A stretch of DNA of 59,963 bases, counting the filler, from Isurus oxyrinchus (Eukaryota): NCBI GenBank assembly GCA_026770705.1. It is 2 parts of 2 records of this genome, joined end to end, with 100 filler letters (N's around TTAATTAATTAA, not from the genome) between each part and the next. Parts side by side here need not be neighbours in the genome. Positions count along the whole stretch, not along the records: positions 29,670 to 59,963 come from JANJGN010001343.1; 1 more part is not named here. One strand, written 5' to 3'. Under the pieces are notes generated by a model that saw nothing but the letters and a program-made list of their open reading frames with translations, had not been told where the DNA came from and made no database searches. Positions 32,151 to 51,895 of this stretch are shown here, one piece after another. Position 1 is the first letter of the stretch, and the number at the start of each line of letters is the position of its first letter. Made by a program: the position numbers and the translations under genes.

Positions 32151-32393
32151 CTGTTGGATAGCAGGCTTGTGCACAAACAGGGTCCTGAGGACCATGAGCC
32201 AATGTAGAATGACCTTGTCAACTCCTGTGTCCAGGATTCCCTTCCATCCGTTGTGAAACCTTGGGGAGTTCCATGTGTGTCCTGTAGATGGTCCACACTG
32301 CAGCCACTGTGCCCCAGTGATGGAGGGAGTGGATATCGAGTCTAGTGGATCTACAAATTATCCAGATTTAAATATTGATATTTCTCTCCCCAG

Positions 32394-32762
32394 TTGGACT
32401 GTCACAAGAATGGGAAAGTAACACTCCACGAGAGGTGACAGCGCAGGAAGGTTCATGTGTACAGATTCCATGTCATTACAATTACCCATCACATTTGTTA
32501 GAGAAAACACGTGTCGGAATCTGGAATATGAGGAGGGACAAATGGAATACATTGTCTACAGCCTTTCACTCCAAGGATCACAGTCACGAGTTACCACGGT
32601 TCCACCATCGGACCCGGCTGTCTGGAGACCTGAAAGATGGTGACTGTTCCCTGATTATAAACAACATCAGACGGGGAGATACAGGATTTTTTTTTTTCAG
32701 AATAGAATTTGACAATGGTCGGAGCCACAACTATTATCCTGTAACCCAGCTTCACGTTTCTG
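32394..32762 (+). CDS. Siglec/MAG-like receptor, V-set exon A
   Basis: AG/GT-bounded, 369 nt, phase 1-1. Siglec V-set signature CVQIPC, GDCSL and the F-strand essential Arg (FFRIE). Confidence 0.88.
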
Positions 32763-33114
32763 GTAAGTGCTATGTTATAATTACTCAACAATTCACATTC
32801 AACACTCAATGGGAAATAACACAAACTGTGATGTTTACATATTAACACAAAACACAGCTTATTTTAACACATTGTCTGATTCTCAATAACCTGGTGATGG
32901 CTTCCAGTTCAGTCCTAAAGCAACGTCTAATACTCACTTTAATATCAATGATGATGAACATTAACTGTATTATCAGGTTACCACTCCCATCAATCTCTCC
33001 TGTCCTGTTTAAAAGTCTGACGTATCGATAAAAGAAAGATGTGCATTTCTGCAGCGCAATTTACCACCTCCCTATTACAGTAATCTCCTCCTTTATCTTC
33101 ATCCACGGCAACAT

Positions 33115-34070
33115 TCCCTATCTCAGGAGCCTCCTCCAGTCCCTACAACCCTCTCTATCTCAGGAGCCTCCTCCAGTCCCTACAACCCTCCCTATCTCAG
33201 GAGCCTCCTCCAGTCCCTACAACCCTCCCTATCTCAGGAGACTCCTCCAGTCCCTACAACCCTCCTATCTCAGTACTCTCTTCCAATCCCGAAAACCATT
33301 CCTATCACTGCAAACTCCTCCGGACCCAACACCCCTCCCTATCTCTTTAACCTCCTCAAGCCCCAATAACCCTCGCGATATTTGTTGCCTCCTCCAGTCC
33401 TAACAACCTCCCCTATCTCTGCAACCTCCTCCAGACCGAATACCTCTCCCTATCTCTGTAAGCTGGTCCATCTCTTACAACCCTTCATATTTCTGTAACC
33501 TCCTCCAGCCCACTACAACCCTCCCTATCTCTGTAACCTCCTCCAGTCCCTAAGAGTTTCCTTTATCTCTGTAACCTCCTCCAGCCATTATAACCCTCCC
33601 TATCTCTGTAGCCTCCCTCAGCCCCAGCCACACTCCATATCTATGTAACCTCGTCCTGCCCTTACAACCCTCCCTATCTCTGTAACCCCATCCTGCCCCA
33701 AAAACTCCCCCATCTCTGTAAACTCCTCCAGTCCCTGCAACCTTCCCTACCTCTGAAACCTCCACCAGCCTTTCCAAGCCTCCCTACCTCTGCAATCCGT
33801 CCAGCCCCTACAACTCTTCCTACCCCTGTAAACTCCTCCAGACCCTAAAACCCTCTCTGCCCTTGCAGCCTCCTCCAGTCCCTACACGCTCCCCATCTCC
33901 ATAAACTCCTCAAATCCCTACAGCCCTCCCTATCTCTGCAACCTCCTCCAGGTCCTACCACCCTCCCTCTCTGCGTAACCTCCTCCAGTATCTACAGCCC
34001 TCCCTATCTCTGTTACCTCCTACAGCCCCCACAAACCTCCCTATCAGTGTAACCTCCTCCAGCCCCTGAT
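33115..34070. repeat. Degenerate 37-bp tandem repeat (CTCCCTATCTCTGTAACCTCCTCCAGTCCCTACAACC)
   Basis: Direct inspection. A reverse-complement array lies at 44960-45260. Confidence 0.85.
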
Positions 34071-34139
34071 GGAAGGTGGGTCGAGCGGGTCAGTCACTTG
34101 CATGTTTATTCTGCAGCTTTAATATTTTAAGATGGTATG

Positions 34140-34930
34140 AATGTAGGAACATAAGAAATAGGGACAGGAGCAGGCCATTCGGCCCCTCAAGCCTGCTCTC
34201 ACTGATCTGGTTGTGGCCTTAACTCCATTCTCCTGCCTGTCCCCCAAACCCTTGACTCCCTTGTCGATCAAAAACCTGCCTCACTCAGCCTTGAGTCTAT
34301 TCAATGGCCCAGCCTCCACTGCTCTCTGGGGAAGAGAATTCCACAGGCTAGCGCCCCTCTGAGAGAGGAAATTCCTCCTCATCTCAGTCTTAAATGGGAG
34401 AGGCCTCATTCCGAAACTGTGCTCCCTGGTTCTAGATTCCCCCACGAGGGGGAAACATCCTCCCAGCATCCACCCTGTCAAGCCCCCTCGGAATCGGATA
34501 TGTTTCAATAAGGTCACCCCTCATTCTTCTAAACTCCAATGGATACAGGCCCAACCTGCTCAACATTTCCTCACAGGACAAACCCTTTAATCCCAGGAAT
34601 CAGCCCAGTGAAGCTTCTCTGAACTGCCTGTACACAATGATCCTGTTACAATCTCACTAACGCCCTGTGCAGCTGTTGCAAGACTTCCCTCCTTTTATAC
34701 TCCATCCCTTTGCAATAAAGGCCAACATTCCACTTGCCTTCCTCATTCCGTGGTGTTCCTGAATGCTGACTTTCTGTGATTCATGTACAAGGACACCCAG
34801 ATCCCTCTGTACTGCATTCTGCATCCTGTCTCCATTTAAATAATATCCTGTTTTTCTATTCTTCCTGCCAAAATAATTTGTTGCCATTCTCCTCAGTATT
34901 GACCATCCCCCCAATTCAGCCTCATCAGTA
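34140..34930 (-). mobile_element. CR1 LINE 3' fragment
   Basis: FKTEMRRNFLSQRGASLWNSLPQRAVEA and VQRDLGVLVHESQKV are CR1 ORF2 C-terminal motifs. Confidence 0.85.
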
Positions 34931-34992
34931 AATTTTGAGTCTAGTGGATCCACAAACCATCCAGAGTTAAATATTGATATTTCTCTCCCCAG

Positions 34993-35361
34993 CTGAACCC
35001 TCACAAGAGTGGAAAGGTGACACTCCACGAGAGGTGACAGCGCAGGAAGATTCGTGTGTACTGATTCCGTGTCATTACAGTTATCCATCGTGTCTGGAAA
35101 ACCAACCGCGAGGTGGAGTCTGGTTTAATAATGAGGAACAGATTTCCTGGGCTCCCATTGCCTTTTACTCCAAGGATCACAGTCACGAGTTACCACGGTT
35201 CCGCCATCGGACCCGGCTGTCTGGAGACCTGAAAGATGGCGACTGTTCCCTGATTATAAACAACATCAGACGGGAAGATGCAGGACCTTATTTTTTCAGA
35301 ATAGAATTTGACAATGGTCCGAGCCATAACTATTACCCTGTAACCCAGCTTCACGTTTCTG
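34993..35361 (+). CDS. Siglec/MAG-like receptor, V-set exon B
   Basis: 369 nt, phase 1-1, with CVLIPC, GDCSL and DAGPYFFRIE. Tandem duplicate of exon A at an offset of 2599 bp. Confidence 0.9.
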
Positions 35362-36174
35362 GTAAGTGCTGTGTTATAATTACTCAACAATTCACATTCA
35401 ACACTCAATGGGAAATAACGCAAACTGTGACGTTTACATATTAACACAAAACACAGCTTATTATAACACGCTGTCTGATTCTCAATAACCTGCTAATAGC
35501 TTCCAGTTCAGTCCTAAAACAACCTCTAATAATCACTTTAATATCAATGATTAAATGTATTGACTGTGTCCATCAATGTTATCAGGTTATCCACTTACAT
35601 CAATCTCCCTAATCCTGTTTAAAATTCTTACATATCAACAAATGAAAGATTTGCATTTCTATAGCGCCTTTCAACACCTCTGGACGTCGCAAATGGATTC
35701 ACAACCATTGAAATAATTCTTGAAATGTAACCCTTGTTGTAATATAGGAAACACAGCAGCCAATTTGTGCACAGGAAGCTCCCAGAAACAGCAATGTGAT
35801 CAATAACCTGATCATCTGCTTTAGATGCCAGTTCAGTGATTGGTTCAAATGGATTCTCTCCTGGTGGCGACAGGATAGAATTTAAATCTGGCAGATTTCA
35901 GAGAAAGTAACAAGCCAGTGTGTCAGGAACTGTGAGCTGCTCCCCCGCCCTCACCTGGGATTGTCAATTCAATTGTCTCAAAGTGGAAGTGAATTCATCT
36001 GAGAGACAGAAATTCCACTAAGTCTGAAAATAGGAAATTCTCTCCTGATCATTGTAACCTCTCAGATCTGATATCATCCTTGTAAAATTGCTTTCTCTTG
36101 TTGGACTGTGATTTCTATTTGAACTGATGCTTCATGTTATATTTCTCTAAAAGGATCCATTCTCTGTCTGTTAG

Positions 36175-36471
36175 ATTTCACAGATAAACCCATGATATTC
36201 CCTGCTGAAATTATTGCAGGAAAGCGTGTGGATGTAAGCTGCACCTTCAACACAACGTGCAATGGAACAGCAGCACCTGTCTTAACCTGGGACACTCCCA
36301 CTGACGTACCTGGATCAGTCTCAAACACTGTAACTCAGCATGGTGTCACTCTGACCTATACTTCTGTTCTGACCCTGATCCCATCACTCAAACACCACGG
36401 ACACACTCTCAGCTGCAGAGTGAGATATCCATCTGTTTCATCGGAGCAGACCCTTATGCTAACTGTAAAAT
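36175..36471 (+). CDS. Siglec-like receptor, domain-2 C2-set exon
   Basis: TTAG/GTAAGT-bounded, 297 nt. DFTDKP..VSCTFNTTC..PVLTW..SVLTLIPSLKHHGHTLSCRV, including the extra Cys for the Siglec D1-D2 disulfide. Confidence 0.9.
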
Positions 36472-36839
36472 GTAAGTATGGATTCCCTTCATTCTATATT
36501 AGCTGTAATAGGATACAATGTGCAGAGCAAGATCCCACAAACATCACTGGGTTGAAGACAAAACAGGTCCTTTTTTATTAGTGATATTGACCAGGGAGAG
36601 CTCTTCCTGTATTGAGCCTTGGGATTGTTTATGCCTACCTGATAGGGCAGAGGGGGCCAAGGTTGAACTTAAAAGACAATATAGGATAATATAAATATTG
36701 TCTTCATTGATGTCAAAGATTTTGGGGGAGATGTAGTATAAAAGTTTAATATTAACAATGTAAATAGATAGTATTTATCATCAGTTACTCAAGGTCACAT
36801 GAGAATAGAACACGGAGAGAGATAGTTCTATAGATACCT

Positions 36840-38900
36840 AGGTACATAGAAACTAGGAGCAGGATTAGGACATTCAGCCCTTCAAGCCTTCTCCGCCATT
36901 CAATATGATCAAGGCTGACCCTCTATCTCAAAGCCTTATTCCCGCTTTCTCTCCGTACCCTTTGATGCCCCTAATATCAAAATATTTATCAGTTTCTTTC
37001 TTGAATACACTCAGTGACCCGGCCTCCACAGCCTCTGTGATGGAGAATTCCACAGATTGACCACCCTCTGAGTGAAGAAATGTTTCCCTATCTCAGTCCA
37101 AAATGGCCTGCCCTGTATCCTGAGATTGTCGCCCTTGGTTTTAGACTCCCCAACCAAGGGATGCATCCTCCCTCCATCCAGTCTGTCTATCTCTGTTAGA
37201 ATTTCTTACGTTTATTCAGGTCTCCTCTCATTCTTCTAAACTCTAGTGAATACAGACCCAGTCGTACCAATTCTCCTCATACGACAGTCCTGCCGCCCCT
37301 GGTATCAGCCTAGAGAACCTTCTCTGCGCTCTCTCGACGGCAAGTCTATCCTTTTTTAGGGAGGGAGACCAAAACGGCACGTAGTACCCCATGTGCAGTC
37401 TCACCAAGACCTTGTATAACTGCAGTAAGACATCCCTACTCCTGAACACAAATCCTCTTGCAATGAAGGCCAACATACCATTTGCCTTCCAAATTACTTG
37501 CTGCACCTGCCTGTTTACTTTCATTGGCTAGTGCACAAGGACACCCAGATCCCTTTGTACATCCACATTTCCCATTATATCACCATTTAAATAATACTCT
37601 GCCTTTCTGTTTTTCACACCAAAGCCTACAATGTCACATTCATCCACATCATCTGCCATGTGTTTGCCCACACACACAACATGTCTAAATCGCCTTGAAG
37701 TCTCTTTGCATCCTCCTCACAGCTCACACCCTTACCCAGCGTTGTGTCATCAGAAAACCTGGAAATATTGCACTTGGCTCCCTCACCCAAGTCATTTAAA
37801 TATATCGTGAATAGTTAGGTCCCAAGCACGGATCCCTGTGGTACACCACTAGTCACTGCCTGCCACTCAGATAAAGACTAATTTATTCTGACCCTCTGTT
37901 TCCTGTCTGTTGACCAATTCTCAATCCATGCCAGTAAATTACCCCCAATCCCATGGGCTTTAATGTTGCCCACTAGCCTCTTATGTGGGACCTTATCAAA
38001 AGCCTTCTTGAAATCTAAAAACACCACATCCACTGGTTATCCCTTATCTATTCCACAAGTTACATCCTCAAAATCTCCAGTAGATTAGTTAAGCATGATT
38101 TTCCTTTCATTAACCCATGCTGACTTTGTCTAATCCCATTAATGCTTTCCAAGCGTTCCGTTAGCACACCTTATATAATAGGCTCTAGCGTTTTCCCCAT
38201 GACTGATGTTAGACTAACTGGTCTGTAATTCTCTGATTTTTCTCTCCCTTCTATTTTAAATAGTGGAGTTACAATTGCCACTCTCCAATCTATAGGAACT
38301 GCTCCAGAGCCTATAGAATTTTGGAGGATGACCACCAGTGCTTCCAATATTTCCAGGGTCACTTCCGTTAGTCTCTGGGATGTAGATTTTCAGGCCCTGG
38401 GGACTGTTCAACCTTTAACCCATTAATTTCTCCAGCTCCATTTTTTAAAACTAATCCTGATTATCTTCAATTCCTCCCTCTCACTAGACACTTGGTTCCC
38501 TAACATTCCTGGGAAATTATTTGTGTCCTCTTTTGTGAAGACAGAACTAAAATATATGTTCAGTTCTTCTGCCATTTCTTTGTTTCTCATTAGAATTTCC
38601 CCCATTTCTGACTGCAAGGAACCTACATCAGTCACTGCTAATCTTTCTCTCTTCACATATTTATAGAAGCTTTTACAGTCGGTTTTTACGTTCCCTGCAA
38701 GTTTACTCCCATGTTCCATTTTCCCCTTCTTGATCAATCTTTTTGTCCACTTTTGCTGAATTCTAAACTGCTCCCAATCCTCAGCATTGCCGCTTCCCCT
38801 GGCAATTTTATGTCTCCTCTCTGGATCTAATACTATCCCTAATTTCTTTTGTAAGCCCTGGTTGAGCACCATTTCCTGACTTATTTTTACGCCAGACAGA
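36840..38900 (-). mobile_element. Decayed CR1 LINE (intronic)
   Basis: NYRPVSLTSVMGKTLE, KSFYKYVKRER and KANGMLAFIARG fragments. Confidence 0.88.
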
Positions 38901-39029
38901 AATGGATAATTGTTGTAGCAAATGCTTCAGCCTTATCTTTTGCCCTGATGTGCTGGGCTCCCCCTTCATTGAGGATGGGGATATTTGTGGATTCCCCTCC
39001 TCCAGTGAGCTAATTGTCCGTTACCATTG

Positions 39030-39900
39030 GATACGAGCATTAGTGGACTGTATTAGACCATTATCGAAAATGAAAGCCGGACTCCAGTATGGCCTCACTA
39101 TGATGGATATGACAAATCGATTTCCAGAGACCATCCCTTTAGGAACAATTACAGCTAAAGTAGTAATAGGGAAGTTAACCCAATTTTTTACCCATTATGG
39201 ATTACTGCTGGAGATCCAGTCAGATCAAGGTTCCATCTCTATGTCTTAAAATTTTCCGAACATAATGAGTAATTTGGGTATAAAACAGTTAAAGTCCACA
39301 GCATATCATCCATAGACACGGGGATCTTTAGAGAGGGACCAACAAACCCTCAAAACAATGATTGAAGCTATTGTCATGAACTCCCCATGACTGGGACAAA
39401 GGACTGGATTTTCTTGTATTTCCCACACGAGATTCACCAAATGAATCGGCAGGTTTTAGTCTTTTTGGAATAACTTATGGACACGAGATAAGAGGCTGTC
39501 TGAAATACATCAAAGAAAGATATTCCGGACAGAGGGATGAATCCTCTATTTCAGATGATGTGTCCATGTTTCAGGAACGGCTCATAGGAGCCTCCAAAGT
39601 GGCACAAGAACATCTTATAGTTTCTCAAACAGAAATGAAGGAATGGGGCAGACAGGCAAGCTGTGACCCGAACATCACAACCAGGGGGATGACGTGTTAG
39701 TATCATTGCCTTGGCAGGGGGAGCCTCTGAAAGCGTGGTTCAGTGGTCCCCACAAGGTAATTAGGAGGGTTGGTCAAGTAAATTATTTGATAGACACCCC
39801 AGATTGTAGAATAAAGAATCGGCTGTGACACATCAATATGTTAAAACGATACCATCGTAGGGAGGGAGGTAAAAAGGAGCAGGTATTTCATTTCCAACCA
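39030..39900 (+). mobile_element. Gypsy-type LTR retrotransposon integrase remnant
   Basis: VDCIRPL..LTMMDMTNRFPETIPL..FFTHYGLLLEIQSDQGS matches an rve core. Stops and frameshifts follow. Confidence 0.8.
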
Positions 39901-40079
39901 GATTCTGCATACATTACAGAAAGGTTAATGCAGCAATAAAACCAGATTCCTACCCAATCCCCCGTTTAGAAGATGGTATTGACGGGGTTGGCAGTGCCAT
40001 GTTCCTTACTGAGATAAATTTGTTGGCAGTGGGAGGTGTTCGTGACCATCAGTGTGGAAGGGTTAGGTTTACAGGTTAC

Positions 40080-40605
40080 ACAGACCACACACGCACCAAC
40101 AGACACACACACACATGNNNNNNNNNNNNNNNNNNNNNNNNNNNNNNNNNNNNNNNNNNNNNNNNNNNNNNNNNNNNNNNNNNNNNNNNNNNNNNNNNNN
40201 NNNNNNNNNNNNNNNNNNNNNNNNNNNNNNNNNNNNNNNNNNNNNNNNNNNNNNNNNNNNNNNNNNNNNNNNNNNNNNNNNNNTACACGCACACGCGCAC
40301 ACAGACAACACACACGCACACACAACACACACACACCTGCACACACGCACATGCACACACACGCACACACACACACACACGCATACACACACACACGTAA
40401 GCACGCACATTCACATGCACACGCACACATACACAACACACNNNNNNNNNNNNNNNNNNNNNNNNNNNNNNNNNNNNNNNNNNNNNNNNNNNNNNNNNNN
40501 NNNNNNNNNNNNNNNNNNNNNNNNNNNNNNNNNNNNNNNNNNNNNNNNNNNNNNNNNNNNNNNNNNNNNNNNNNNNNNNNNNNNNNNNNNNNNNNNNNNN
40601 NNNNN
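40080..40605. repeat. (CA)n-rich microsatellite with two assembly gaps
   Basis: Direct inspection. Confidence 0.9.
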
Positions 40606-41015: not shown

Positions 41016-41297
41016 ATGCACCACGGAATCTCTCAATCAATTCTCTTGATATGATTAACGCTTCATGGATCAATATAATTGAGGGGAATTCTGCAGTGAT
41101 AATCTGCTCTGTCGAGAGCTTCCCAGCTTCTAACCTGACGTGGCGACATCTTAATGTCCCACTGATCAGAACAAGTTCCAACGATGAGCTGTGGCTGGTG
41201 ATTCCTCACGTTACATCCAAGGACACTGGAAACTATCAGTGTGTGGCAGAGAATGAACATGGAGCAGTGGAGGGATTCATAAACATCACTGTGGAAT
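41016..41297 (+). CDS. Siglec-like receptor, C2-set exon 3a
   Basis: TTTAG/GTGAGT-bounded, 282 nt, phase 1-1. YAPRNLSI..IICSVESFPASNLTW..DTGNYQCVAENEHG. Confidence 0.88.
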
Positions 41298-41319
41298 GTG
41301 AGTTAATGCAAACTTCAAC

Positions 41320-41359
<40 letters not shown>

Positions 41360-42184: not shown

Positions 42185-42466
42185 ATGCACCACGGAACCT
42201 ATCAATTACTTCTCTTGATATGATTAACGCTTCATCCATCAACATAATTGAGGGGAATTCTGCAGTGATAATCTGCTCTGTCGAGAGCTTCCCAGCTTCT
42301 AACCTGACGTGGCGACATCTTAATGTCCCAATGAACAGAACAAGTTCCAACAATGAGCTGTGGTTGGTGATTCCTCACGTTACATCCAGGGACACTGGAG
42401 ACTATCAGTGTGTGGCAGAGAATGAACATGGAGCAGTGGAGGGGTTCATAACCATCACTGTGGAAT
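42185..42466 (+). CDS. Siglec-like receptor, C2-set exon 3b (duplicate of 3a)
   Basis: 282 nt, phase 1-1, near-identical to 3a (DTGDYQCVAENEHG). Confidence 0.88.
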
Positions 42467-42779: not shown

Positions 42780-43960
42780 GCTGATTCTGAGCATCTGGCA
42801 GCATCTGTGGAGAGAAAGACAGGGTTAGCGTTTGGAGTCCGTAAGACTCCTCTTCAGAGCTAAAGGGAAGTAGACATGTGGTGAAATATATCCTGTCTAA
42901 GGGGGGGCGATGGGACAGGTGGAGCTGGATAGAAAACCAGCGATAGGTGGAGGCAATGGAGAGATTGTGGAAGATGTCATAAACAAAAGGTCAAAGGGTT
43001 GTTAACAGTGGTGGTATTGGATAAAGGAGGTGCTAATGGTGACATTAAGCAGAGTGTGATAATGGGGGACCAGGGTAAGCACTCTGGAAAGAGACAGATG
43101 GCCCTTGTGGGGGTGTGGCAGGGGGAGGGGACGGTGGAGGGAATAAAGATCGAAAATAGACTAAAATCTGTGGATAAAACAATCAATAAAAATGGAAATG
43201 AATTTCAAATAATAATAATAAAAATAAGTGGAAAACAGTCAACAAATAAAACAATTAAAATGAATACATAAAAAAAGGGTTCAAAAAGCAGTGAAGATCG
43301 AGGAGAGAGTTCATGATCTGAAATTGTTGAACTCAATATTCAGTCCGGAAGGCTGTAAAGTGCCAGGTCGGAAGATGAGGTGCTGTTCCTCCAGTTTGTG
43401 TTGGGCTTCACTGGAACAATGCAGCAGGCCAAGGACGGACATGTGGGCATGAGAGCAGGGTGGGGTGTTAAAATGGCAAGCGACAGGGAGGTCTGGGTCA
43501 TGCTTGTGGACAGACCGAAGGTGTTCATCAGAGCGATCACCCAGTCTGTGTTTGGTGTCTCCAATGTAGAGGAGACCACATTGGGAGCAGTGAATGCAGT
43601 AGATTATATTGAAGGAAGTCTGCATGAAGCGCTGCTTCACCTGGAAGGAGTGTTTGGGTCATTGGACAGTGAGGGGGGAGGAAGTAAAGGGGCAGGTGTT
43701 GCACCTTCTGCAAATGCATGGGAAGATGTCATCGGAGAGGGTTGAGATGCTAGGGGTGATGGAGGAGTGGACCAGGGTGTCCTGGAGGGAATGATCCCTG
43801 TGGAATGCCAACGTGGGGGGGGGGTGGGGGGGGCGGATGTGGTGAAGGGAAGATGTGTTTGGTGGTGGCATCATGCTGGAGTTGGCGGAAATGGCGGAGA
43901 ATGATCCTTTGAATGAGGAGGCTGGTGGGGTGAAAAGTGAAGACAGGAGGGACCCTTACG
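42780..43960 (-). mobile_element. Penelope-like element fragment (GIY-YIG)
   Basis: IYCIHCSQCGLLYIGDTKHRLGDRSDEHLRSV in ORF 43311-43640. Confidence 0.82.
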
Positions 43961-44335
43961 TTGCTCTGGGAGGGAGAGGAATTTGCAAGGGGGGATGCGC
44001 GGCAGATACACAATCTCCAACTCTTTCTCAACCATTAAGATGCTCCTTAAAACCATTAAGACACACCATTAAAACCTCCTGCTTTCAGCGAGCTTTTGCT
44101 CACCTCTCCTAATATCTCCTAATGTGACTCGGGGTCAGATTTTGTCCGAAGGAGGTGAGAAATGATGGAGGGAATTCCAGAGGTTAGGGTCCAGGCAGCT
44201 GAAGGCACGGCCGCCAATGGTGGAGAGATGGGAATGGGAGAATGTGCAAGGGGTCAGAATTGGAGGAGCGCAGAGATTTCGGAGAGCTGTGGGGTGTGGG
44301 GATTACCTGCTGATTGTTCTCTGTCTTTGTTCCAG

Positions 44336-44611
44336 ATTCCCCACAGGAGACGATGGTGTCCATCAGCAGATCCTCAGGTGGGATAAGAGAGGGAAGCAAT
44401 ATCACATTAACCTGCTCCAGTGAAAGTGTCCCACCGATATCTCATTACACCTGGTTCAGGATCGAGGGGAACACCAGCACCCAGTTAAACACAAGTAGCC
44501 GCACTCTCTCCTTCACTCCTGTAACACGGGAGAATGATGCAGGTTTCTACTGCACAGCGAGGAACCCAATGGGTAACAGCACCTCCAACATCACCCACCT
44601 GAACGTACAAT
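44336..44611 (+). CDS. Siglec-like receptor, C2-set exon 4
   Basis: TCCAG/GTAAGC-bounded, 276 nt. IREGSNITLTCSSESVPPISHYTWF..DAGFYCTARNPMG. Confidence 0.9.
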
Positions 44612-44959
44612 GTAAGCATTTTACTCCCCCTGTCTCTGCTTAAAACTCAAACACTTTCTGTCTGAGGGCAGCTTCCTTGCTGTGGTTTAGCATAACTAGC
44701 ATCACCTCCCTGCTTTTTTCACCCTGCGCCTCTCCGAGATACATAAGGAGATATTAGAACAGGGACTGAAAGCTCAGAGAAAGAGGCCGGATTTTAAGGA
44801 GTGTCTGAAATGAGGAGAGAGATAGAAATGGAGAGGTTTACGGAGGTAATTCCAGAGCTCGGGGCCCAGGCAGCTGAAGGCACGGCCGCCAATGGTGGAG
44901 CGGTAGGAATCGGGGGATGGTCAAGAGGCCGGAATTGGAGGAACGCAGAGACCTCGGAG

Positions 44960-45260
44960 GGATGTAGATGCTGGAGGAGGTTACAGAGATAGGGAGGGTT
45001 GTGGGGTCTGGAGGAGGTTACAGAGATAGGGAGGGTTGTGATGGCTGGAGGAGGTAACAGAGATAGGGAGGGTTATAGGGGCTGGAGGAGGTAACAGAGA
45101 TAGGGAGGGTTGTAGATGCTGGAGGAGGTAACAGAGATAGGGAGGGTTGTGGGGTCTGGAGGAGGTTACAGAGATAGGGAGGGTTGTAGGGTCTGGAGGA
45201 GGTTACAGAGATAGGGAGGGTTGTAGGGGCTTGAGGAGGTTACAGAGATAGGGAGGGAGT
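44960..45260. repeat. 37-bp tandem repeat (GGAGGAGGTTACAGAGATAGGGAGGGTTGT...)
   Basis: About 8 units, reverse complement of the 33115-34070 family. Confidence 0.85.
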
Positions 45261-45567
45261 AAGGAGGGATTTGAAACGATGATAATTTTAAAATTGTGGC
45301 ATTGTCGGACCGGGAGCCAGTGTAGCTCAGTGACCAACAGGGAGTGATGTCTGAACGGGACTCGGTGTGAGTTAGGACATGGGGACAGCAGAGTTTGGGA
45401 TGAGCTGATGTTTCCGGAGAGTGGAAGATGAGAGGTCGGGCAGGAGAGTGTTGCGATAGTCGAGTACGGAGGTAACAAAGGCAGGAATGAGTGTTTCAGT
45501 GTGAAGATTCTATCTTACGCTCTAACTTTGCTATGAAGTTGTCTCATTGTTGTCCTTCCCTCCTCAG

Positions 45568-45861
45568 ATAAGCCGGAGATTTCCCAGCAGTCAGAGTGCA
45601 CTCGGAGGTCAGAGGGGGTCACCTGCATCTGTGTGGCCAACTCCAACCCACCCGGAGACCTCACCTGGCACCTGCCCAGTGCCAACATCAGTGCTAACCA
45701 AACACACGGAGGTTTTGTGTCGTGGCAGGTCAGAGATGGGCATCTGGTGACTGGTTCCCTCACCCTGATGAGACCCCAGGATGAGGGGGGAGTGATTGCA
45801 TCCTGCTCGGTTCAAAACCCACATGGGGAAGCCATGTTCAAGATGTATCTGTGGGTCAAAG
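45568..45861 (+). CDS. Siglec-like receptor, membrane-proximal Ig exon (MAG domain-5-like)
   Basis: CTCAG/GTGAAA-bounded, 294 nt. SECTRRSEGVTCICVANSNPPGDLTWHLPSANIS shows the C..CxC..SNP pattern of MAG and CD33-related proximal domains. Confidence 0.88.
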
Positions 45862-46209
45862 GTGAAAGACTCGCTCAGGATCGATCTCCACTCAGCTGGA
45901 TTGATCCCTAAACTCGAGAATTCGCTCCCTCAACCTCTCCACCTCTCTCTCTACCTCCTCTAAGATGCTCTTTACAACTGACCCCTTTGACCAAGCTTTG
46001 AATCGTCTGACCTCATGTGACAATGGCAACACTTGGTCAAATTGGAGCCAGGCCGTTCAGGGGGTGATGTCAGGAAGCACTTCTTCACACAAAGGGGAGT
46101 GGAAATCTGGAACCCTCTCCCCCAGATAAGCTGCTTCATTGGGTGCAAGACAGAAAGCTTTGACAAAATGTCCTTTCTCAGCAATACTCAGGTTCTCCTC
46201 CCAAACGAT

Positions 46210-46355
46210 AAAATATTATATATAAACATTTCATAGATTACATTGATAAATATTATATATAAATGTTACATAGATTACATTGATAAATATTATATATAAA
46301 TGTTACATAGATTACATTGATAAATATTATATATAAATGTTACATAGATTACGTT
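46210..46355. repeat. AT-rich 37-bp tandem repeat, about 4 copies
   Basis: catagattac recurs at 46232, 46269, 46306 and 46343. Confidence 0.85.
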
Positions 46356-46782
46356 GAGAAACGCAACAGCTGATTTGTGCAGAGCAAGATCCCACAAACA
46401 ACAGTGTGAAGATGAGGTGATAAATGATTATTTTAGTGATGTTAGTTGATACATATATATAGAAATTAAAGATATAATTACACATTTAGTGAGGGAAACC
46501 TGTCCATTTTAACAGGTCTGGGTGTGTATGTGACTCCAGTCTCAAACACCAACATGGTTAACTCTTACCTGCCCTCTGAACTGGTCTCCCAGTTTGGGAC
46601 AAACCAGTGGTTCAGGAGGAAGACCCCCCACCACCTTCTCAAGGGGAAACTAGGGATGGACAATAAATGTCAGCATTGCCCGAGAATGAGTATTTAAACA
46701 CTGAGTGAGTGTATCGCTTCTCGAGATACATCGGAGCATCATTGTAAACCTGTAGTGCAGTAATTAATGACTGTTTTTACAG

Positions 46783-46879
46783 GTAGAGACTCCAGTAAAT
46801 GGACAGTAGGATTGTTCACGGCTGGGATCATGTTGAGTGTTTTCCTGGCTGGAATCTTCATCTTCATCTGTGTGAGAAA
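46783..46879 (+). CDS. Siglec-like receptor, transmembrane exon
   Basis: TTTTACAG/GTAAGT-bounded, phase 1-2. GRDSSKWTVGLFTAGIMLSVFLAGIFIFICVRK has no charged TM residue. Absent from the ORF track. Confidence 0.88.
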
Positions 46880-46999
46880 GTAAGTCTGAAGATTTAACTT
46901 GATTTTAATATAAACATTTGTTTAGGATTAATTGGACAGTTTTTACAAAGGGCCAGCACAGGCACGATGGGCTGAGTGGCTCCCTCCTGAGCTGTGAGA

Positions 47000-47470
47000 T
47001 TTTAAATTCTTTCATCGAATGTGACTGTCACTGGCGTGGCCAATACTAATTGCCCATTCCCTAAATGCCCCTTGAGAATGAGGTGGTGAGCTGCCTTCTT
47101 GAACCACTGCAGTCCATGTGGTGTAGGTACACCCACAGTGCTGTTAGAGAGGGAGCTCCAGGATTTTGACCCAGCGACAGTGAAGGAACGGTGATATATT
47201 TCCAAGTCAGGATGGTGAGTGACTTAGAGGGGAACTTCCAGGTGGTGGTGTTCCCATGTGTCTGCTGCCCTTGTCCTTCTAGATGGTAGAGGTCGTGGGT
47301 TTGGAAGGTGCTGTTGAAGGAGCCTTGCTGAGTTGCTGCAGTGCATCTTGTATATGTTACACACACTGCTGCCACTGTGTGTTCATGGTGGAGGGAGTGA
47401 ATGTTTAATGTGGTGGATGGGGTGTAGATCAATCGGGCTGCTTTGTCCTGGATGGTGTCGAGCTTCTTAA
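47000..47470 (-). mobile_element. LINE 3' end (duplicated at about 49470-49935)
   Basis: Reverse complement of the 53750-54180 family. Confidence 0.8.
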
Positions 47471-47602
47471 TTCTGTGCTTTGTGCAGAAGTGATTTAAAG
47501 AGACAGTCCAGTCGTTGGTGTAAGGTTACAGTGGGCACTGTGTCTGTGCTGCACTGACTCTCTGCTATGTGATAACCACAGTGTGATATTGTGTTATTGC
47601 AG

Positions 47603-47684
47603 GAGGAAGACAGCGATGGAGGAGAGAGTTTCAGGGACCAGTGACATTGCATTGACCCCCAGTCCACTCTCTGTGAAGCACCAG
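47603..47684 (+). CDS. Cytoplasmic tail A, exon 1
   Basis: TTGCAG/GTACAG-bounded, 82 nt, phase 2-0 matching the TM exon. RKTAMEERVSGTSDIALTPSPLSVKHQ. Confidence 0.8.
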
Positions 47685-48670
47685 GTACAGGAGCTGTTTA
47701 CACTCACTCCAAAGCTTCAATCTCAGTGTGTAGACAACACATGTCCCAGATTCCCTGCCCAGTTACCCACTGATTTGTACCTGTGGAGTCAGCAATGGTT
47801 CAGTATCATGCTGTCTCTCTGTTATGACACAGCAACTGGTAAAGGCTGTTGTTTAAAAACCCAGAGGGAAACTTTAAACAACTGTCATAACCTATATTTC
47901 CCAGTGGAATGTTTGAGATGCATCTCTAAATTCAGGAATAAGACCACCAGTTCTCGAGATGGGTTTATATCAAACTAAATGAGACATATATTAATTTACA
48001 CAAGTTAAACATATGCACATGGTTACAAACTAGTATTATCATAACTTTTTAACAAATTCTCAAACTAATCTCCTCTAAGACAACCCATAGTCTTTAAGCA
48101 GATTCCAGGCATTTTCACCTCACAAATTCCAGTTTCTCTCTCTATCTCAACCTCCCTTTCTTTCTCTCTCTTTCTCTCTCTCTCATCCTCTCTCTGATTA
48201 CAAGGTTCATGTTATTGAGCCTCACGTCAGGCACCTGTGTGCAGAATCCAAGCCGTCACTCACCAGAGCCATTACCGATTGAGTGCGAGACTGACAGAGG
48301 GTCAGTACTGAGGGAGCGCTGCACCATCGGAGGGTCAGTACTGAGGGAGCGCTGCACTGTCAGAGGGTCAGTACTGAGGTTTTTGCTGCGCTGTCGGAGG
48401 GTCAGTACTGAGGGAGTGCGAGACTGACAGAGGGTCAGTACTGAGGGAGTGCGAGACTGACAGAGGGTCACTATTGAGGATGTGCTGCACTGTTGGAGGG
48501 TCAGTCCTGAGGGAGCACTGCACTGCCATAGGTGGTTTCTTTCATAAGACATGGGAGAGAGAGTTAAACCCACTGAGACACGACTGACATTAACGAAGCT
48601 GCACAATAATTTAACCCTATCAGTGCCAGTAAATAATGTGAGGATGTCTTCTGTTTCCATTTCTCTGTAG

Positions 48671-48919
48671 GGTAAACAGAACGTGCTGATTACTGAGCCC
48701 CGGAACACAACCAGAGACACAACTAGTGAGGGGGAGACCCCAGCTCCCCGGGGTCTCTCTGAAGATGCAGTGGGAGGCGATGCTGGACTTGGGAACCCCG
48801 GCAAACCTGAAGAGTTTCTCTACGCCAATCCCCAAGTTTTGAGGGTGTCCAGTGATGATGGGTCTGTCCACAGGGAAGAGGAGACGGAATACGCACAGAT
48901 CAGGTTTGAGCATAACTGA
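48671..48919 (+). CDS. Cytoplasmic tail A, terminal exon (FLYANP degenerate ITIM, distal TEYAQI)
   Basis: CTGTAG acceptor, phase 0, open to TGA. Confidence 0.8.
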   Translation, partial: GKQNVLITEPRNTTRDTTSEGETPAPRGLSEDAVGGDAGLGNPGKPEEFLYANPQVLRVSSDDGSVHREEETEYAQIRFEHN

Positions 48920-49445
48920 ATGAGAAATGGGGAGTGGGAGTGAGGAGATGTGGGTGTGCGGGTAGGGATTGAGATCCCTGGGAACAGGAAACAACCCACT
49001 GGGGGAGAGGGGGAGAGAGGGAGGAAGGGATGGAATTGGGCTGCGGTTGGTGTGGTTTGGAATGAAATGCTTCTCCAGAGAGGACTGGATGCTGAGCCAT
49101 TGAGGAGTGAGATTCACTGTCTCTCTCTCTCTCTCTCTCTCTTCCTCTCTGTCTCTCTCTTTCTTTCTGTGTCAGTCTCTCATTCTCTATCTCTTGCTCC
49201 TCCTTTAAGATGACCCTTAATGACTGACTTTGTTGACTCAGCTGTTGGTCTCCTGTCCCTAATATCTCCTCATGTGCCTCAGAGTCAGGTGAAATGTGAC
49301 TAACAATCCCCGGATGAGCCTTGGGACATTTTGCTACATTGAAGGTGCTATATAAATGCAAGTTGTTGCAGTAACTCTGATCTGCTTCGATTAACAATGG
49401 AACCACAGAGGTTCCTTCGACAGGGCGTGTGTGCAGCAGGGTCAC

Positions 49446-49451
49446 AATAAA
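49446..49451 (+). terminator. Candidate polyadenylation signal for tail A
   Basis: AATAAA about 530 bp after the stop, just before the second duplicate block begins (about 49458). Confidence 0.5.
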
Positions 49452-50068
49452 TACATTGAGCTGTGAGATTTTTAATTCTTACATCGAATGTGGCTGTCAC
49501 TGGTGATGTCCGCATTGATGCCAATCTCTAACTGCCCTTGAGAAGGTGGTGGTGAGCTACCTTCTTCACCCGCTGCAGTGCATGTGGTGTAGGTACACCC
49601 ACAGTGCTGTTAGAGAGGGAATTCCAGGATGTTAACCCAGCGACAGTGAAGGAATGGTGATATATTTCCAAGTCAGGATGGTGAGTGACTTGGAGGGGAA
49701 CTTCCAGGTGGTGGTGTTCCCATGTGTCTGCTGTCCTTGTCCTTCTGGATGGTAGAGGTCGCGTATTTGGAAGGTGCTGTTGAAGGAGCCTTGCTGAGTT
49801 GCTGCAGTGCATCTTGTAGATGGTACACACACTGCTGCCACTGTGTGTTCATGGTGGAGGGAGTGAATGTTTAATGTGGTGGATGTGGTATGGATCAATC
49901 GGGCTGCTTTGTCCTGGATGGTGTCGAGCGTCTTGATTCTGTGCTTTGTGCAGAGGTGATTTAAAGAGAGAGTCCAGTCATTGGTGTAAGGTTACAGTGG
50001 GCTCTGTGTCTGTGCTGCACTGACTCTCTGCTATATGATAACCACAGTGTGATATTTTGTTATTGCAG

Positions 50069-50150
50069 GAGAAAGACAGCGATGGAGGAGAGAGTTTCAG
50101 GGACCAGTGACATTGCATTGACCCCCAGGTCACTCTCTGTGAAGCACCAG
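50069..50150 (+). CDS. Cytoplasmic tail B, exon 1
   Basis: 82 nt, phase 2-0. RKTAMEERVSGTSDIALTPRSLSVKHQ. Confidence 0.8.
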
Positions 50151-50285
50151 GTACAGGAGCTGTTTACACTCACTCCAAAGCTTCAATCTCAGTGTGTAGA
50201 CAACATATGTCCCAGATTCCCAGCCCAGTTACCCACTGATTTGTACCTGTGGAGTCAGCAATGGTTCAGTATCATGCTGTCTCTC

Positions 50286-51218
50286 TGTTATGACACAGCA
50301 ACTGGTAAAGGCTGTTGCTTAAAATCCCAGAGGGAAACTTTAAACAGCTGTCGTAACCTATATTTCGCAGTGGAATGTTTGAGATGCATCTCTAAATTCA
50401 GGAATAAGACCACCAGTTCTCAAGATGATTTTATATCAATCTAAATGAGACATTTATTAATTTTCACAAGTTAAACATATGCACATGGCTACAAACTAGT
50501 ATTATCATAACTTTATAACAAATTCTCAAACTAATCTCCTCCAAGACAACCCATAGACTTTAAGCAGACACCAGGCAAAGCATTTTCACCTCACAAATTC
50601 CAAATGAGGTTCCTTTCACTTTGGTTCCTTTGCAGACAGGTGTAGGCTTACAGCTGCTTTGATGTTACAAGCCTCTGCTCTGCACACACAAAACTGCTCA
50701 AGTTATACCCAGCTCTTGAGTGTGAAGAAGATGGAGATTGATGGGCTCTTGATTGGTCAGGGGATCAATGGTTAGGAGAGAAGGTGGGAGAATGGGGTTT
50801 GTGAAACATATCAGCCATGTATGAATGGTGGAGCAGACTCGATGGACCGAATGGTCTAATTTCTCCTCCTATGTCTTATGGTCTTATGGCTTCTGTTTGA
50901 AGGTAAATTCGCAATGTATCATCAGGACCTTTGAACTCCATCTCTTCCAATAATAAATCCTCTTTCATCGTATCAATTTTATTAGTAATATAAACGTTGA
51001 TTGGTTTAACATTTCACTCTCAGACTTTGAATGTTTTATTTAAAAATGCAAATTACCACTTTACCTCTTTGTTTACATCTCAAAACTACTATACATCAAA
51101 GCACACAGACTGGCTGGCTTTAATCCAATTAAAATACACACAGACACACACACAGACTAAACCTCTGTTTAAATAGACAGTTTGCAATTGCAATACAAAC
51201 ATTAATAGATTAATAACA
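50286..51218. mobile_element. Solo LTR-like element with nested CR1 tail (about 50715-50890)
   Basis: TGTTAT...ATAACA inverted termini, flanked by CTCTC and CTCTG (imperfect TSD). Confidence 0.65.
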
Positions 51219-51646
51219 CTCTGTCTCTATCCCTCCTCTATCCCTCTCTCTCATCCTCTCTCTGATTACAAGGTTCATGTTATTGAGCCTCACACCAGGC
51301 ACCTGAGCGCAGAATCCAAGCCGTCACTCACCAGAGCCATTACCGAGGGAGTGCGGGACTGACAGCGGGTCAGTACTGAAGGAGTGCTGCACTGTTGGAG
51401 GGTCAGTACTGAGGGAGTGCTGCACTGACAGAGGGTCAGTACTGAGGGAGCGCTGTATTGTCGGAGGGTCAGCACTGAGGGAGTGCTGCACTGTTGGAAG
51501 CTCAGTACTGAGGGAGTGCTGCACTGCCATAGGTGGTGTCTTTTTTCCGATAGGAGAGAGAGAATTAAACAAGTCTGCACAATAATTTAACCCTATCAGT
51601 ACCAGTAAATGATGTGAGGATGTTTTCTGTTTCTATTTCTCTGTAG

Positions 51647-51895
51647 GGTAAACAGAACGTGCTGATTACTGAGGCCCGGAACACAACCAGAGACACAACT
51701 AGCGAGGGGGAGACCCCAGCTCCCCGGGGTCTCTCTGAAGGTGCAGTGGGAGGCGATGTTGGACATGGGAACCCCGACAAACCAGACGAGCTTTTCTACG
51801 CCAACATCAACTTTTCAAAGCTGCCCGGCGGTGACAGGACTGTGCACAGGAGCGAGGAAACGGAATACGCACAGATCAGGTTCCAGAAAAACTGA
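51647..51895 (+). CDS. Cytoplasmic tail B, terminal exon (ITIM LFYANI plus ITSM-like TEYAQI)
   Basis: CTGTAG acceptor, phase 0. Shows the two-tyrosine arrangement of CD33-related Siglecs. Confidence 0.85.
   Translation, partial: GKQNVLITEARNTTRDTTSEGETPAPRGLSEGAVGGDVGHGNPDKPDELFYANINFSKLPGGDRTVHRSEETEYAQIRFQKN

What the first reader, a model, noticed from the sequence alone, without database searches (positions are those of the whole stretch)
32394..51895. Modular Siglec/MAG-like gene with separately duplicated ligand-binding, stalk and signalling cassettes
Seen: one collinear exon chain V(A), V(B), C2, C2(3a), C2(3b), C2, proximal Ig, TM, tail A (2 exons), tail B (2 exons). All exons are open with intact AG/GT sites. 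Ig exons are phase 1-1, and both tails accept the phase-2 TM exon. Three local duplications exist (offsets about 2.6, 1.2 and 2.5-3.0 kb) around a single TM exon. Known: the underlying 1V+4C2 plan is that of MAG/Siglec-4, and Siglecs usually diversify as separate paralogous genes. Inference: one gene could mix glycan specificity, stalk length and inhibitory output by alternative splicing. The leader exon was not found in the window.
Basis: partly seen in the sequence, partly recalled or inferred. Interest (0 to 1): 0.8.

Follow-up and report, generated by a model that had tools for sequence, protein, structure and literature searches.

The report
Shark Siglec gene with repeated cassettes
This is most of one shark immune-receptor gene of the sialic-acid-binding Siglec family whose sugar-binding head, one stalk domain and its signalling tail are each present twice, a layout shared by many shark and ray genes, where the copies seem to be strung together as often as chosen between.

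Summary
Window 32394-51895 carries twelve + strand exons with AG/GT sites and matching phases: V(A), V(B), D2, 3a, 3b, D4, D5, TM, tail A (2 exons), tail B (2 exons). There are three real local duplications, at 82-96% exon identity. Both assembly gaps lie in a (CA)n microsatellite inside the D2-3a intron, and no reading frame crosses them.

The gene belongs to a large Siglec-like family of sharks and rays. Its closest relatives are automatic RefSeq models of great white and basking shark, at 90-97% per exon.

The either/or splicing reading is only partly supported:
- V(A) and V(B) match conserved first-position and second-position heads.
- An extra cysteine occurs in 35 of 72 downstream heads, 0 of 46 first heads and 1 of 139 single heads.
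- RNA contigs show V(B)-D2 splicing in 3 of 4 runs, and a V-end to V-start junction in one run.
- Exon A2 has an in-frame splice donor before its stop. Five lamniform models use that junction to read two tails in series.

I had no RNA evidence for the 3a/3b or tail junctions. Other agents of this scan reported the same family, with doubled tails and multi-V arrays, on other pieces of this genome. None of my searches found a paper on shark Siglecs. My verdict is a new variant of a known kind, of moderate interest.

The parts
32394..32762 (+). Exon V(A): first-position V-set head, phase 1-1, 369 nt
   Evidence: Pfam V-set E 2.7e-11 and Ig_CD22 2.5e-8. Best PDB hits are Siglec-5, CD33, sialoadhesin and MAG, with the Arg of FFFRIE aligned to the Arg of Siglec-5 YFFRVE. 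Groups with P0154_V1, support 90/90. AG/GT sites.
34993..35361 (+). Exon V(B): second-position V-set head with an extra Cys (PSCLENQ), phase 1-1, 369 nt
   Evidence: Pfam V-set E 2.4e-11. Falls in the clade of second heads, support 97/94. Extra Cys statistics. Spliced to D2 in RNA contigs of X1, X6 and X7.
36175..36471 (+). Exon D2: C2-set domain with three Cys, phase 1-1. The frame reads on through the donor to a stop at 36581.
   Evidence: Pfam C2-set_2 E 7.8e-9. PDB hits nectin-4, MAG and CD33 domain 2. The read-through peptide is about 83% identical (my count by eye, roughly 30 of 36 residues) to the C-terminus of basking-shark isoform X6, P0162.
40118..40605 (.). Two assembly gaps (40118-40283, 40442-40605) with 158 nt of (CA)n between them, intronic
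   Evidence: Flanks are microsatellite, and no frame crosses the gaps.
41016..41297 (+). Exon 3a: I-set/C2 stalk domain, phase 1-1, 282 nt
   Evidence: Pfam Ig_3 E 1.3e-12. 91% amino-acid identity to 3b. dN/dS 0.38.
42185..42466 (+). Exon 3b: duplicate stalk domain, phase 1-1, 282 nt
   Evidence: Pfam Ig_3 E 2.4e-12. 96-97% identical to D3 repeats of basking-shark P0239.
44336..44611 (+). Exon D4: C2-type Ig domain, phase 1-1
   Evidence: Pfam Ig_3 E 2.1e-12. 89% identical to P0264.
45568..45861 (+). Exon D5: membrane-proximal Ig domain, phase 1-1
   Evidence: Best PDB hit is MAG residues 396-480, E 3.7e-12. Pfam Ig_3 and C2-set_2 fall below cut-off. 94% identical to P0264.
46783..46879 (+). 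TM exon (single copy), phase 1 to 2
   Evidence: Hydrophobic stretch ending in VRK. 97% identical to P0154 and P0176.
47603..47684 (+). Tail exon A1, phase 2 to 0
   Evidence: 96% nucleotide identity to B1.
48671..48919 (+). Tail exon A2 with motifs FLYANP and TEYAQI, a stop at 48917-48919, and an in-frame internal donor CAG|GT at 48903|48904
   Evidence: The same junction (TEYAQIR followed by R/K-KTA) is used in P0264, P0176, P0153, P0175 and P0174.
50069..50150 (+). Tail exon B1, phase 2 to 0
51647..51895 (+). Tail exon B2 with the ITIM-consensus motif LFYANI and the ITSM-like motif TEYAQI, then a stop
   Evidence: 85% identical to the terminal tails of P0239 and P0264.

Best explanation
Window 32394-51895 is one gene, lacking its leader exon, which lies beyond the piece. 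It encodes an inhibitory, Siglec-family type I membrane receptor of a lamniform shark. It belongs to a large shark-and-ray family built from repeatable exon cassettes.

I read the three duplications as stackable modules rather than either/or choices:
1. V(A) and V(B) are the conserved first and second heads of a two-headed receptor. They are spliced in series. Each keeps the canonical sialic-acid arginine and its own conserved B-C to C' patch, while the rest of the exon has been homogenised between the copies by gene conversion.
2. 3a and 3b are two stalk domains. Their number varies from 0 to 8 in family models.
3. The two-exon tail cassette is 315 nt (82 + 233) and runs from phase 2 to phase 2 when an internal 5' splice site in A2 is used, 13 nt before the stop codon. 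The tail can then be read as A, or as A followed by B. Skipping A would give B alone.

All cassettes are symmetric in phase, so inclusion or skipping never breaks the frame.

Shown here: the exons, their phases, the duplications, the V(B)-D2 splice in RNA contigs, one V-end to V-start junction, and the matching architectures in relatives' models.

Inferred: serial use of 3a/3b and of the tails in this species; sialoglycan binding; and inhibitory signalling through phosphorylated LFYANI (ITIM consensus) and TEYAQI (ITSM-like) recruiting SHP-type phosphatases. The motif consensuses are recalled, not tested. Tail A's first motif, FLYANP, fails the ITIM consensus but keeps Y-x-N. By recalled consensus that is a Grb2-SH2 type site.
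For: - Exon structure and phases.
- Duplications.
- Siglec identity: V-set and Ig_CD22 Pfam hits. PDB best hits are Siglec-5, CD33, sialoadhesin and MAG, with the Arg aligned. Cys21, Cys26 and Cys84 are conserved family-wide. The Arg is kept in 24 of 25 first, 38 of 44 downstream and 118 of 123 single heads.
- Family: the V(B) search gave 1209 hits, and its 7 best hits have 2-4 V stretches. Names are from automatic RefSeq annotation of sharks and rays.
- Heads in series: P0154 reads V1-V2-D2-D5-TM-tail A and shares V(A)'s patch. In the tree, VA sits with P0154_V1 and VB with second heads. Patch identity VA-P0154_V1 is 24/26 against 7/24 for VA-VB. C-part identity VA-VB is 58/64 against 50/64 for VA-P0154_V1. 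The extra Cys occurs in 35/72 downstream, 0/46 first and 1/139 single heads. The one exception is a model that starts 3 residues before its V domain.
- RNA: the joint 35360-36174 (GT..AG) is seen in X1, X6 and X7 but not X5. One X1 contig joins 32762 to 35001 with 8 letters between that equal V(A)'s first 8 letters and the start of P0154's second head.
- Tails in series: the A2 internal donor and the 315-nt cassette. P0264 reads V-D2-D3-D4-D5-TM-tailA-tailB. P0176, P0153, P0175 and P0174 are joined at the same residue.
Against: - The relatives' proteins are automatic gene models. A predictor tends to include every in-frame symmetric exon, so serial inclusion may be over-called.
- The V-V junction is one contig in one run of another coded organism (A). 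It could come from a paralogue or a back-splice.
- V(A) contigs in the organism-B runs are only about 94% identical (10 other letters in 163), so expression of this V(A) is not proven.
- Only 15 joints were printed and 171 were not shown. A V(A)-D2 or leader-V(B) joint may exist unseen.
- No RNA was laid on 3a/3b or on the tails.
- The closest full-length model, P0264, has one V and one D3, so it is not a strict orthologue.
- The A2 internal donor is weak (6 of 9 consensus positions), and AATAAA at 49446 could end tail-A transcripts.
- dN/dS between copies is 0.69 for V and 0.89 for T2. Open frames would survive by chance with probability 0.08, 0.68 and 0.46, so intactness alone proves little.
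- The extra-Cys association rests on related sequences. It may reflect a single origin, and 37 of 72 downstream heads lack the Cys (many of these are distant proteins).
Confidence: 0.6

Rival explanations
1. One reading: the duplicates are alternatives. One gene chooses head A or B, stalk 3a or 3b (or both), and tail A or B. This mixes glycan specificity, reach and inhibitory output by alternative splicing.
For: - All cassettes are phase-symmetric and have intact splice sites.
- The heads differ mainly in the B-C to C' patch, 7/24 identical. The tails differ in the first tyrosine motif.
- Relatives' models include skipped forms: V-V-TM-tail, V-D2-TM-tail, tail A only and tail B only.
- Polyadenylation hexamers lie after both A2 (49446) and B2 (52972).
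Against: - A V-end to V-start junction is seen in RNA contigs.
- The first-position and second-position head types are conserved, and the extra Cys is almost confined to downstream heads.
- Serial tails through the A2 donor appear in 5 models.
- No junction specific to this reading was seen, though 171 joints were not printed and only the V region was laid.
Confidence: 0.25
2. One member of each pair is a decaying, never-spliced pseudo-exon left by unequal crossing-over. The gene makes a single isoform.
For: Open frames could persist by chance (P 0.08 for V, 0.68 for D3, 0.46 for T2). dN/dS is 0.69 for V and 0.89 for T2. Tail A has lost the ITIM consensus. Another agent's note reports a stop in the first tail copy of a paralogue (unchecked).
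Against: - All 24 splice sites and frames are intact.
- V(A)'s patch is 24/26 identical to great white P0154_V1.
- The tail-A type (Y-A-N-P) is kept in 10 models of two lamniform species.
- Exon 3a/3b identity is 94.6% against 78.7% in the upstream intron, and dN/dS is 0.38.
Confidence: 0.1
3. The tandem copies are an assembly artefact: two alleles or paralogues laid side by side.
For: Two assembly gaps sit at the 5' edge of the 3a unit in a microsatellite. DNA runs hold only 0.35-0.38 of the sampled words.
Against: - The copies differ by 4-18% in exons and carry indels in introns. That is far beyond ordinary allelic difference.
- Unique sequence separates the copies.
- The same order recurs in other species' models: first head then second head, tail A then tail B.
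- An RNA contig joins a V end to a V start.
Confidence: 0.03

Closest known systems
Automatic RefSeq models of great white shark (Carcharodon carcharias): P0264 'myelin-associated glycoprotein-like isoform X2', P0154 'Siglec-13 isoform X2', P0176, P0153. Basking shark (Cetorhinus maximus): P0002 and P0162 'Siglec-12 isoforms X3/X6', P0174, P0175.
   Same: - 90-97% identity per exon.
- Same leader-less exon types: two heads in the same order, D2, D3 repeats, D4, D5, TM.
- Tail A then tail B, joined at the same residue.
- Same intron-encoded ending after D2.
   Different: None combines two heads, two D3 domains and two tails in one model. None is identical to the window. They are predictions, and I found no experimental description of them.
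Primate Siglec-12 (Siglec-XII)
   Same: A Siglec with two N-terminal V-set domains (passage in PMC6288428). It has an inhibitory-type tail (recalled).
   Different: It arose independently in mammals (inference). The shark second head has its own conserved type with an extra cysteine. Both shark heads keep the canonical Arg. The shark stalk and tail are also repeated.
MAG / Siglec-4
   Same: One V plus four C2-type domains. D5 is specifically MAG-D5-like (E 3.7e-12), and V and D2 also hit MAG. MAG has alternatively spliced long and short tails (recalled).
   Different: The tail carries ITIM/ITSM-like tyrosine motifs that I do not recall in MAG. Proteins named Schwann-cell-myelin-protein-like or MAG-like in sharks exist at only 36-44% identity to P0264. 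This family is therefore probably not the MAG orthologue.
CD33-related Siglecs (Siglec-5, -7, -10 and others) and CD22
   Same: The V domain is most similar to Siglec-5 and CD33. The tail has a membrane-proximal ITIM-consensus motif and a distal T-E-Y-x-x-I motif. As I recall it, this is like the ITIM plus ITIM-like pair of CD33-related Siglecs. CD22 has several such motifs (recalled).
   Different: A separate elasmobranch expansion. Its cassettes are repeated inside genes, and a stop-bypassing donor allows the tail unit to be stacked.
Mutually exclusive exon arrays (for example insect Dscam)
   Same: Tandem, phase-symmetric Ig exons within one gene.
   Different: There is no evidence here of one-of-many choice. 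The copies are seen or predicted in series.

Membership tests
Siglec family (I-type sialic-acid lectins) | N-terminal V-set Ig domain with the canonical arginine on the F strand | tested here: met
   V-set and Ig_CD22 Pfam hits for both heads. The Arg of F-F-R-I-E aligns with the Arg of Siglec-5 Y-F-F-R-V-E. The Arg is conserved in most family heads. That this Arg is the essential one is recalled.
Siglec family (I-type sialic-acid lectins) | Unusual cysteine pattern: a B-E intrasheet pair plus a cysteine for a disulfide to the next domain, and a C2 domain with a third cysteine | tested here: met
   C-x4-C in the B strand region and D-C-S-L in both heads. Cys21, Cys26 and Cys84 are present in nearly all of 257 family heads. 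D2 has three Cys. This is the sequence pattern only; no disulfide was tested.
Siglec family (I-type sialic-acid lectins) | Binds sialylated glycans | not testable with these tools
   Needs recombinant protein and a glycan array.
Inhibitory (CD33-related-type) Siglecs | Cytoplasmic ITIM (S/I/V/L-x-Y-x-x-I/V/L) plus a distal ITIM-like/ITSM motif | tested here: met
   Tail B has L-F-Y-A-N-I and T-E-Y-A-Q-I. Tail A has F-L-Y-A-N-P, which fails at -2 and +3, and T-E-Y-A-Q-I. The consensus is recalled. Phosphatase recruitment was not tested.
Inhibitory (CD33-related-type) Siglecs | Orthology or synteny with the mammalian CD33-related cluster | not testable with these tools
MAG / Siglec-4 orthologue | One V plus four C2 domains with a MAG-type domain 5, and closest similarity to MAG over the whole length including the tail | tested here: inconclusive
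   The D5-MAG D5 hit is strong, but no other Siglec's fifth domain appeared among the hits, and I do not recall one being solved. The V domain scores Siglec-5, CD33, sialoadhesin and MAG alike. The tail has no Pfam hit. Separate MAG/SMP-named shark proteins are only 36-44% identical.
Mutually exclusive exon choice | Transcripts carry exactly one exon of each array | tested here: not met
   For the V pair only: a V-end to V-start junction in an X1 contig, and both heads present in relatives' models. Not tested for 3a/3b or the tails in this species.

The most novel reading that the evidence does not exclude
Sharks and rays have an old class of two-headed (or many-headed) Siglecs with three features. 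First, a dedicated 'second-position' V domain carries an extra B-C-loop cysteine that staples it to the interdomain cysteine of the head before it. Second, each head keeps its own species-conserved specificity patch while gene conversion homogenises the rest. Third, the inhibitory tail is lengthened cassette by cassette through a splice donor that bypasses the stop codon. One gene could then tune specificity or avidity, reach, and signalling dose.
Probability: 0.3. Interest if true: 0.7.

Novelty: new variant of a known kind. Interest (0 to 1): 0.45.

Why it matters
As I recall the field, Siglecs are taken to diversify quickly only in mammals, as separate genes, and fish are usually credited with only the conserved members. 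If these shark genes work as read here, cartilaginous fish built a large inhibitory Siglec repertoire by a different route: repeating exons inside genes. This gives testable handles on three questions:
- How a second lectin head is attached (the extra cysteine).
- How specificity loops are kept distinct under gene conversion.
- How the number of tyrosine motifs in a tail can be set by splicing.

This particular gene is one example among many in the same genome, and automatic annotation of other sharks already predicts such models. Its value therefore lies in the family, not in this locus alone.

Tried and rejected
I used their protein models instead.
- Leader exon: tblastn with seven family proteins and motif scans found none in the piece.
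- Selection tests: dN/dS between copies and an open-frame survival simulation were not decisive. I dropped them as main evidence in favour of cross-species conservation.
- Pfam on the tail exons found nothing. Pfam on exon D5 fell below cut-off.
- Extra exons: the tblastn map of 308 family proteins shows none on either strand.
- V(A) as an exon of a separate upstream gene: rejected. Between V(A) and V(B) there is only a 37-nt minisatellite and repeat-derived sequence, with no TM or tail homology.
- Assembly artefact: rejected (see the rival explanations).
- Structure prediction: not run. The tool returns no coordinates, so the proposed head-to-head disulfide could not be measured.
- Literature: six searches turned up no paper on shark or ray Siglec genes. 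The only listed paper combining Siglec with shark terms in a relevant way is PMC8455134. I read one passage of it, which names Siglec proteins among the immunoglobulin-domain-containing gene families discussed in its section on ancestral vertebrate genome evolution. Its Supplementary file 9 may list them, but supplements were closed and I did not ask for them.
- Papers seen:
  - PMC8455134: one passage.
  - PMC6288428: four passages.
  - PMC13358205: four passages.
  - All others: search listing only.
- Recalled and not seen: Siglec-12 splice variants, MAG long and short tails, the role of the C-C' loop in Siglec specificity, the fish Siglec repertoire, and the ITIM, ITSM and Grb2 consensus motifs.

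Full report
**What is in the sequence.**

The piece 29670-59963 has four N runs. Two are at its artificial left end, and two lie inside the finding, at 40118-40283 and 40442-40605.

| Exon | Coordinates | Note |
|---|---|---|
| VA | 32394-32762 | phase 1-1 |
| VB | 34993-35361 | phase 1-1 |
| D2 | 36175-36471 | phase 1-1 |
| 3a | 41016-41297 | phase 1-1 |
| 3b | 42185-42466 | phase 1-1 |
| D4 | 44336-44611 | phase 1-1 |
| D5 | 45568-45861 | phase 1-1 |
| TM | 46783-46879 | phase 1 to 2 |
| A1 | 47603-47684 | phase 2 to 0 |
| A2 | 48671-48919 | ends in a stop |
| B1 | 50069-50150 | phase 2 to 0 |
| B2 | 51647-51895 | ends in a stop |

All Ig exon lengths are multiples of three. A tblastn map of the 308 family proteins held at that point shows homology only at these twelve places and only on the + strand. 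No leader exon was found, so the 5' end of the gene lies beyond the piece.

**The gaps.**

Both gaps lie in a degenerate (CA)n microsatellite in the 4.5-kb D2-3a intron. No exon or frame crosses them. The second gap ends exactly where homology to the second stalk unit begins (40606 against 41408, 92%), and that unit is preceded by the same (CA)n. Relatives' proteins pass directly from D2 to a D3-type domain. The exon chain therefore does not depend on the gaps. Their true length is unknown, and a further hidden D3-type exon cannot be excluded.

**The duplications.**

The repeat finder and self-blastn confirm three local duplications:
- The V unit, offset 2599, 85% identity.
- The stalk unit, offset 1169, 89%.
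- The tail unit, offsets 2466-3068, 82-93.5%.

The tail unit begins 109 nt after the TM exon, so the TM exon is single. Exon copies are 82% (V), 94.6% (3a/3b), 96.3% (A1/B1) and 85.4% (A2/B2) identical in DNA. At the protein level they are 72%, 91% and 73% identical for V, 3a/3b and A2/B2. Such divergence, together with intron indels and unique spacers, rules out falsely stacked alleles.

**What it is.**

- Both V exons hit Pfam V-set and Ig_CD22. D2 hits C2-set_2. Exons 3a, 3b and D4 hit Ig_3.
- Against solved structures, V(A) is closest to Siglec-5, CD33, sialoadhesin and MAG (E 6.5e-11 to 1.4e-9). The arginine of F-F-R-I-E aligns with the arginine of Siglec-5 Y-F-F-R-V-E.
- D5's best solved relative by far is MAG domain 5 (E 3.7e-12). 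D2 hits nectin-4, MAG and CD33. D3 is a generic I-set domain that also hits MAG domain 4.
- Tail B carries L-F-Y-A-N-I and T-E-Y-A-Q-I. By recalled consensus these are an ITIM and an ITSM-like motif. Tail A carries F-L-Y-A-N-P, which fails the consensus, and T-E-Y-A-Q-I.

**The family.**

A full HMMER scan with the V(B) exon found 1209 proteins at E up to 1e-3, of which 29 were at 1e-30 or better. The seven best hits have two to four V stretches each. Cluster look-up and three word searches name them as automatic RefSeq models from some twenty shark and ray species, under varied labels: Siglec-5/8/10/12/13, CD33-like, MAG-like, CD22-like and hemicentin-like. Per exon, the closest are great white and basking shark models at 90-97%. 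None is identical, so the window is from a lamniform shark or a close paralogue.

I assigned domains with the window's single exons as queries. Of 219 family models (those with a D2 or tail hit, out of 295 with any hit among 308 proteins):
- 61 have 2-6 V domains.
- 57 have 2-8 D3-type domains.
- 58 have a tail, and 5 of those have two tails in series.

Proteins P0309-P0316, fetched later, are not in these counts.

**The heads.**

I built a tree of 30 V domains: the two window exons plus the V domains of 19 models that I chose as the closest lamniform and a few other sharks. It puts V(A) with the first head of great white P0154 (support 90/90), inside a group of first heads (94/94). It puts V(B) in a starred clade of second heads (97/94).

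By segments:

| Segment | VA vs P0154_V1 | VA vs VB |
|---|---|---|
| Patch, residues 33-58 | 24/26 identical | 7/24 identical |
| C-terminal part, residues 59-122 | 50/64 identical | 58/64 identical |

By the alignment, the patch runs from the B-C loop to the C' strand (strand names are recalled). The pair is therefore old. The two copies exchange sequence by gene conversion, and the patch is held distinct in each position across species. The patch's high synonymous difference (pS 0.60 against 0.07-0.28 in the flanks) fits this mosaic better than simple positive selection.

V(B) also has a fourth cysteine (P-S-C-L). Counting V segments of at least 95 residues, a cysteine at that place is found in 35 of 72 downstream heads, 0 of 46 first heads and 1 of 139 single heads. 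The single exception is a model that begins three residues before its V domain. The 35 come from at least eleven species, including rays (names). Many of the 37 downstream heads without it are distant proteins, and relatedness inflates such counts.

I infer that the extra cysteine may pair with the interdomain cysteine of the preceding head. I have not shown this. The canonical arginine is kept in 24 of 25 first, 38 of 44 downstream and 118 of 123 single heads, counting heads at least 45% identical to V(B).

**RNA.**

The one run search listed 23 runs. I laid four of them, from four studies and two coded organisms, on 30490-36480. All are contigs, so depth means little.
- The joint 35360-36174, with GT..AG ends, is the V(B)-D2 splice. 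It is present in X1, X6 and X7 and absent in X5. One X6 contig matches V(B) and D2 with 1 other letter in 258.
- One X1 contig joins 32762, the last base of V(A), to 35001 with eight letters between. Those letters equal the first eight letters of V(A) and also the start of P0154's second head. I read this as a V-to-V splice in organism A. A paralogue or a back-splice is not excluded.
- V(A) is covered in X1, X6 and X7, but the listed X6 piece has 10 other letters in 163.
- Only 15 joints were printed and 171 were not, so the absence of a V(A)-D2 joint from the print means nothing.

**The tails.**

Exon A2 has a CAG|GT site at 48903|48904, 13 nt before its stop codon. A1 plus A2 up to that site is 315 nt and runs from phase 2 to phase 2, so it can be followed in frame by B1. 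Great white P0264 (V-D2-D3-D4-D5-TM-tail A-tail B), P0176 and P0153, and basking shark P0175 and P0174, are joined at exactly that residue: T-E-Y-A-Q-I-R followed by R/K-K-T-A. The donor is weak (6 of 9 consensus positions), and an AATAAA lies at 49446. A-only transcripts are therefore also plausible, and skipping A would give B only.

The tail-A type (Y-A/S/V-N/S-P) is seen in 10 models, all from the two lamniform species. Every other species has the tail-B type. Tail A keeps Y-x-N, which by recall is a Grb2-type site.

**Other isoform hints.**

The D2 frame reads through its donor to a stop at 36581. The encoded ending is about 83% identical (my count by eye, roughly 30 of 36 residues) to the C-terminus of basking shark 'Siglec-12 isoform X6', and both stop at the same place. 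This suggests a conserved soluble form made by intron retention.

**Verdict.**

The gene is modular and phase-compatible, but the evidence favours stackable cassettes, with skipping possible, over either/or choice, and the architecture is a family trait rather than a peculiarity of this locus. Other agents of this scan reported doubled tails, a seven-V array and modular tails on other pieces of this same genome. I treated those notes as leads and re-derived the family counts myself. Six literature searches found no paper on shark Siglec genes. A passage in PMC6288428 confirms that primate Siglec-12 has two V-set domains.

Noticed in passing
window 33115-34067 and 44956-45257: A 37-nt minisatellite (25.8 copies) lies in the V(A)-V(B) intron, and an inverted 8-copy array of the same unit lies in the D4-D5 intron. 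RNA-run contigs pile up on it to summed depths of up to about 386,000, so the unit is abundant genome-wide or transcribed widely.
   Followed up: partly
window 55664-59957: A 4.3-kb purine-rich satellite with a 12-nt unit (about 368 copies) runs to the end of the piece. It creates spurious open frames of up to 1147 aa on the - strand.
   Followed up: partly
window 36472-36581: The D2 frame continues through its splice donor for 36 codons to a stop. The peptide and the stop position are conserved with basking-shark isoform X6. This may be a conserved soluble isoform made by intron retention.
   Followed up: partly
family proteins (P0154, P0002, P0164, P0277 and others); window 35089-35091 region of V(B): An extra cysteine in the B-C loop (P-S-C-L) marks V domains that follow another V domain: 35 of 72 downstream, 0 of 46 first and 1 of 139 single heads. 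It may be a head-to-head disulfide partner.
   Followed up: partly
window 53104-53637 (+), 37243-38872 (-), 43311-43640 (-): Retroelement debris in and after the gene. There is an RVT_1 reverse-transcriptase fragment (E 4.9e-10), unassigned open frames, and a weak GIY-YIG match below cut-off (E 0.0086). Segments 47049-47382 and 49519-49848 match 53808-54138 in reverse.
   Followed up: no
window 48290-48532 and 51341-51526: A 33-nt tandem repeat lies inside the intron between the two tail exons in both tail units, with different copy numbers. This explains the shifting offset (2466 to 3068) within the tail duplication.
   Followed up: partly
window 51879|51880: Exon B2 keeps the same CAG|GT site before its stop as A2 (5 of 9 consensus positions). 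A further tail unit could be appended in genes that have one.
   Followed up: no
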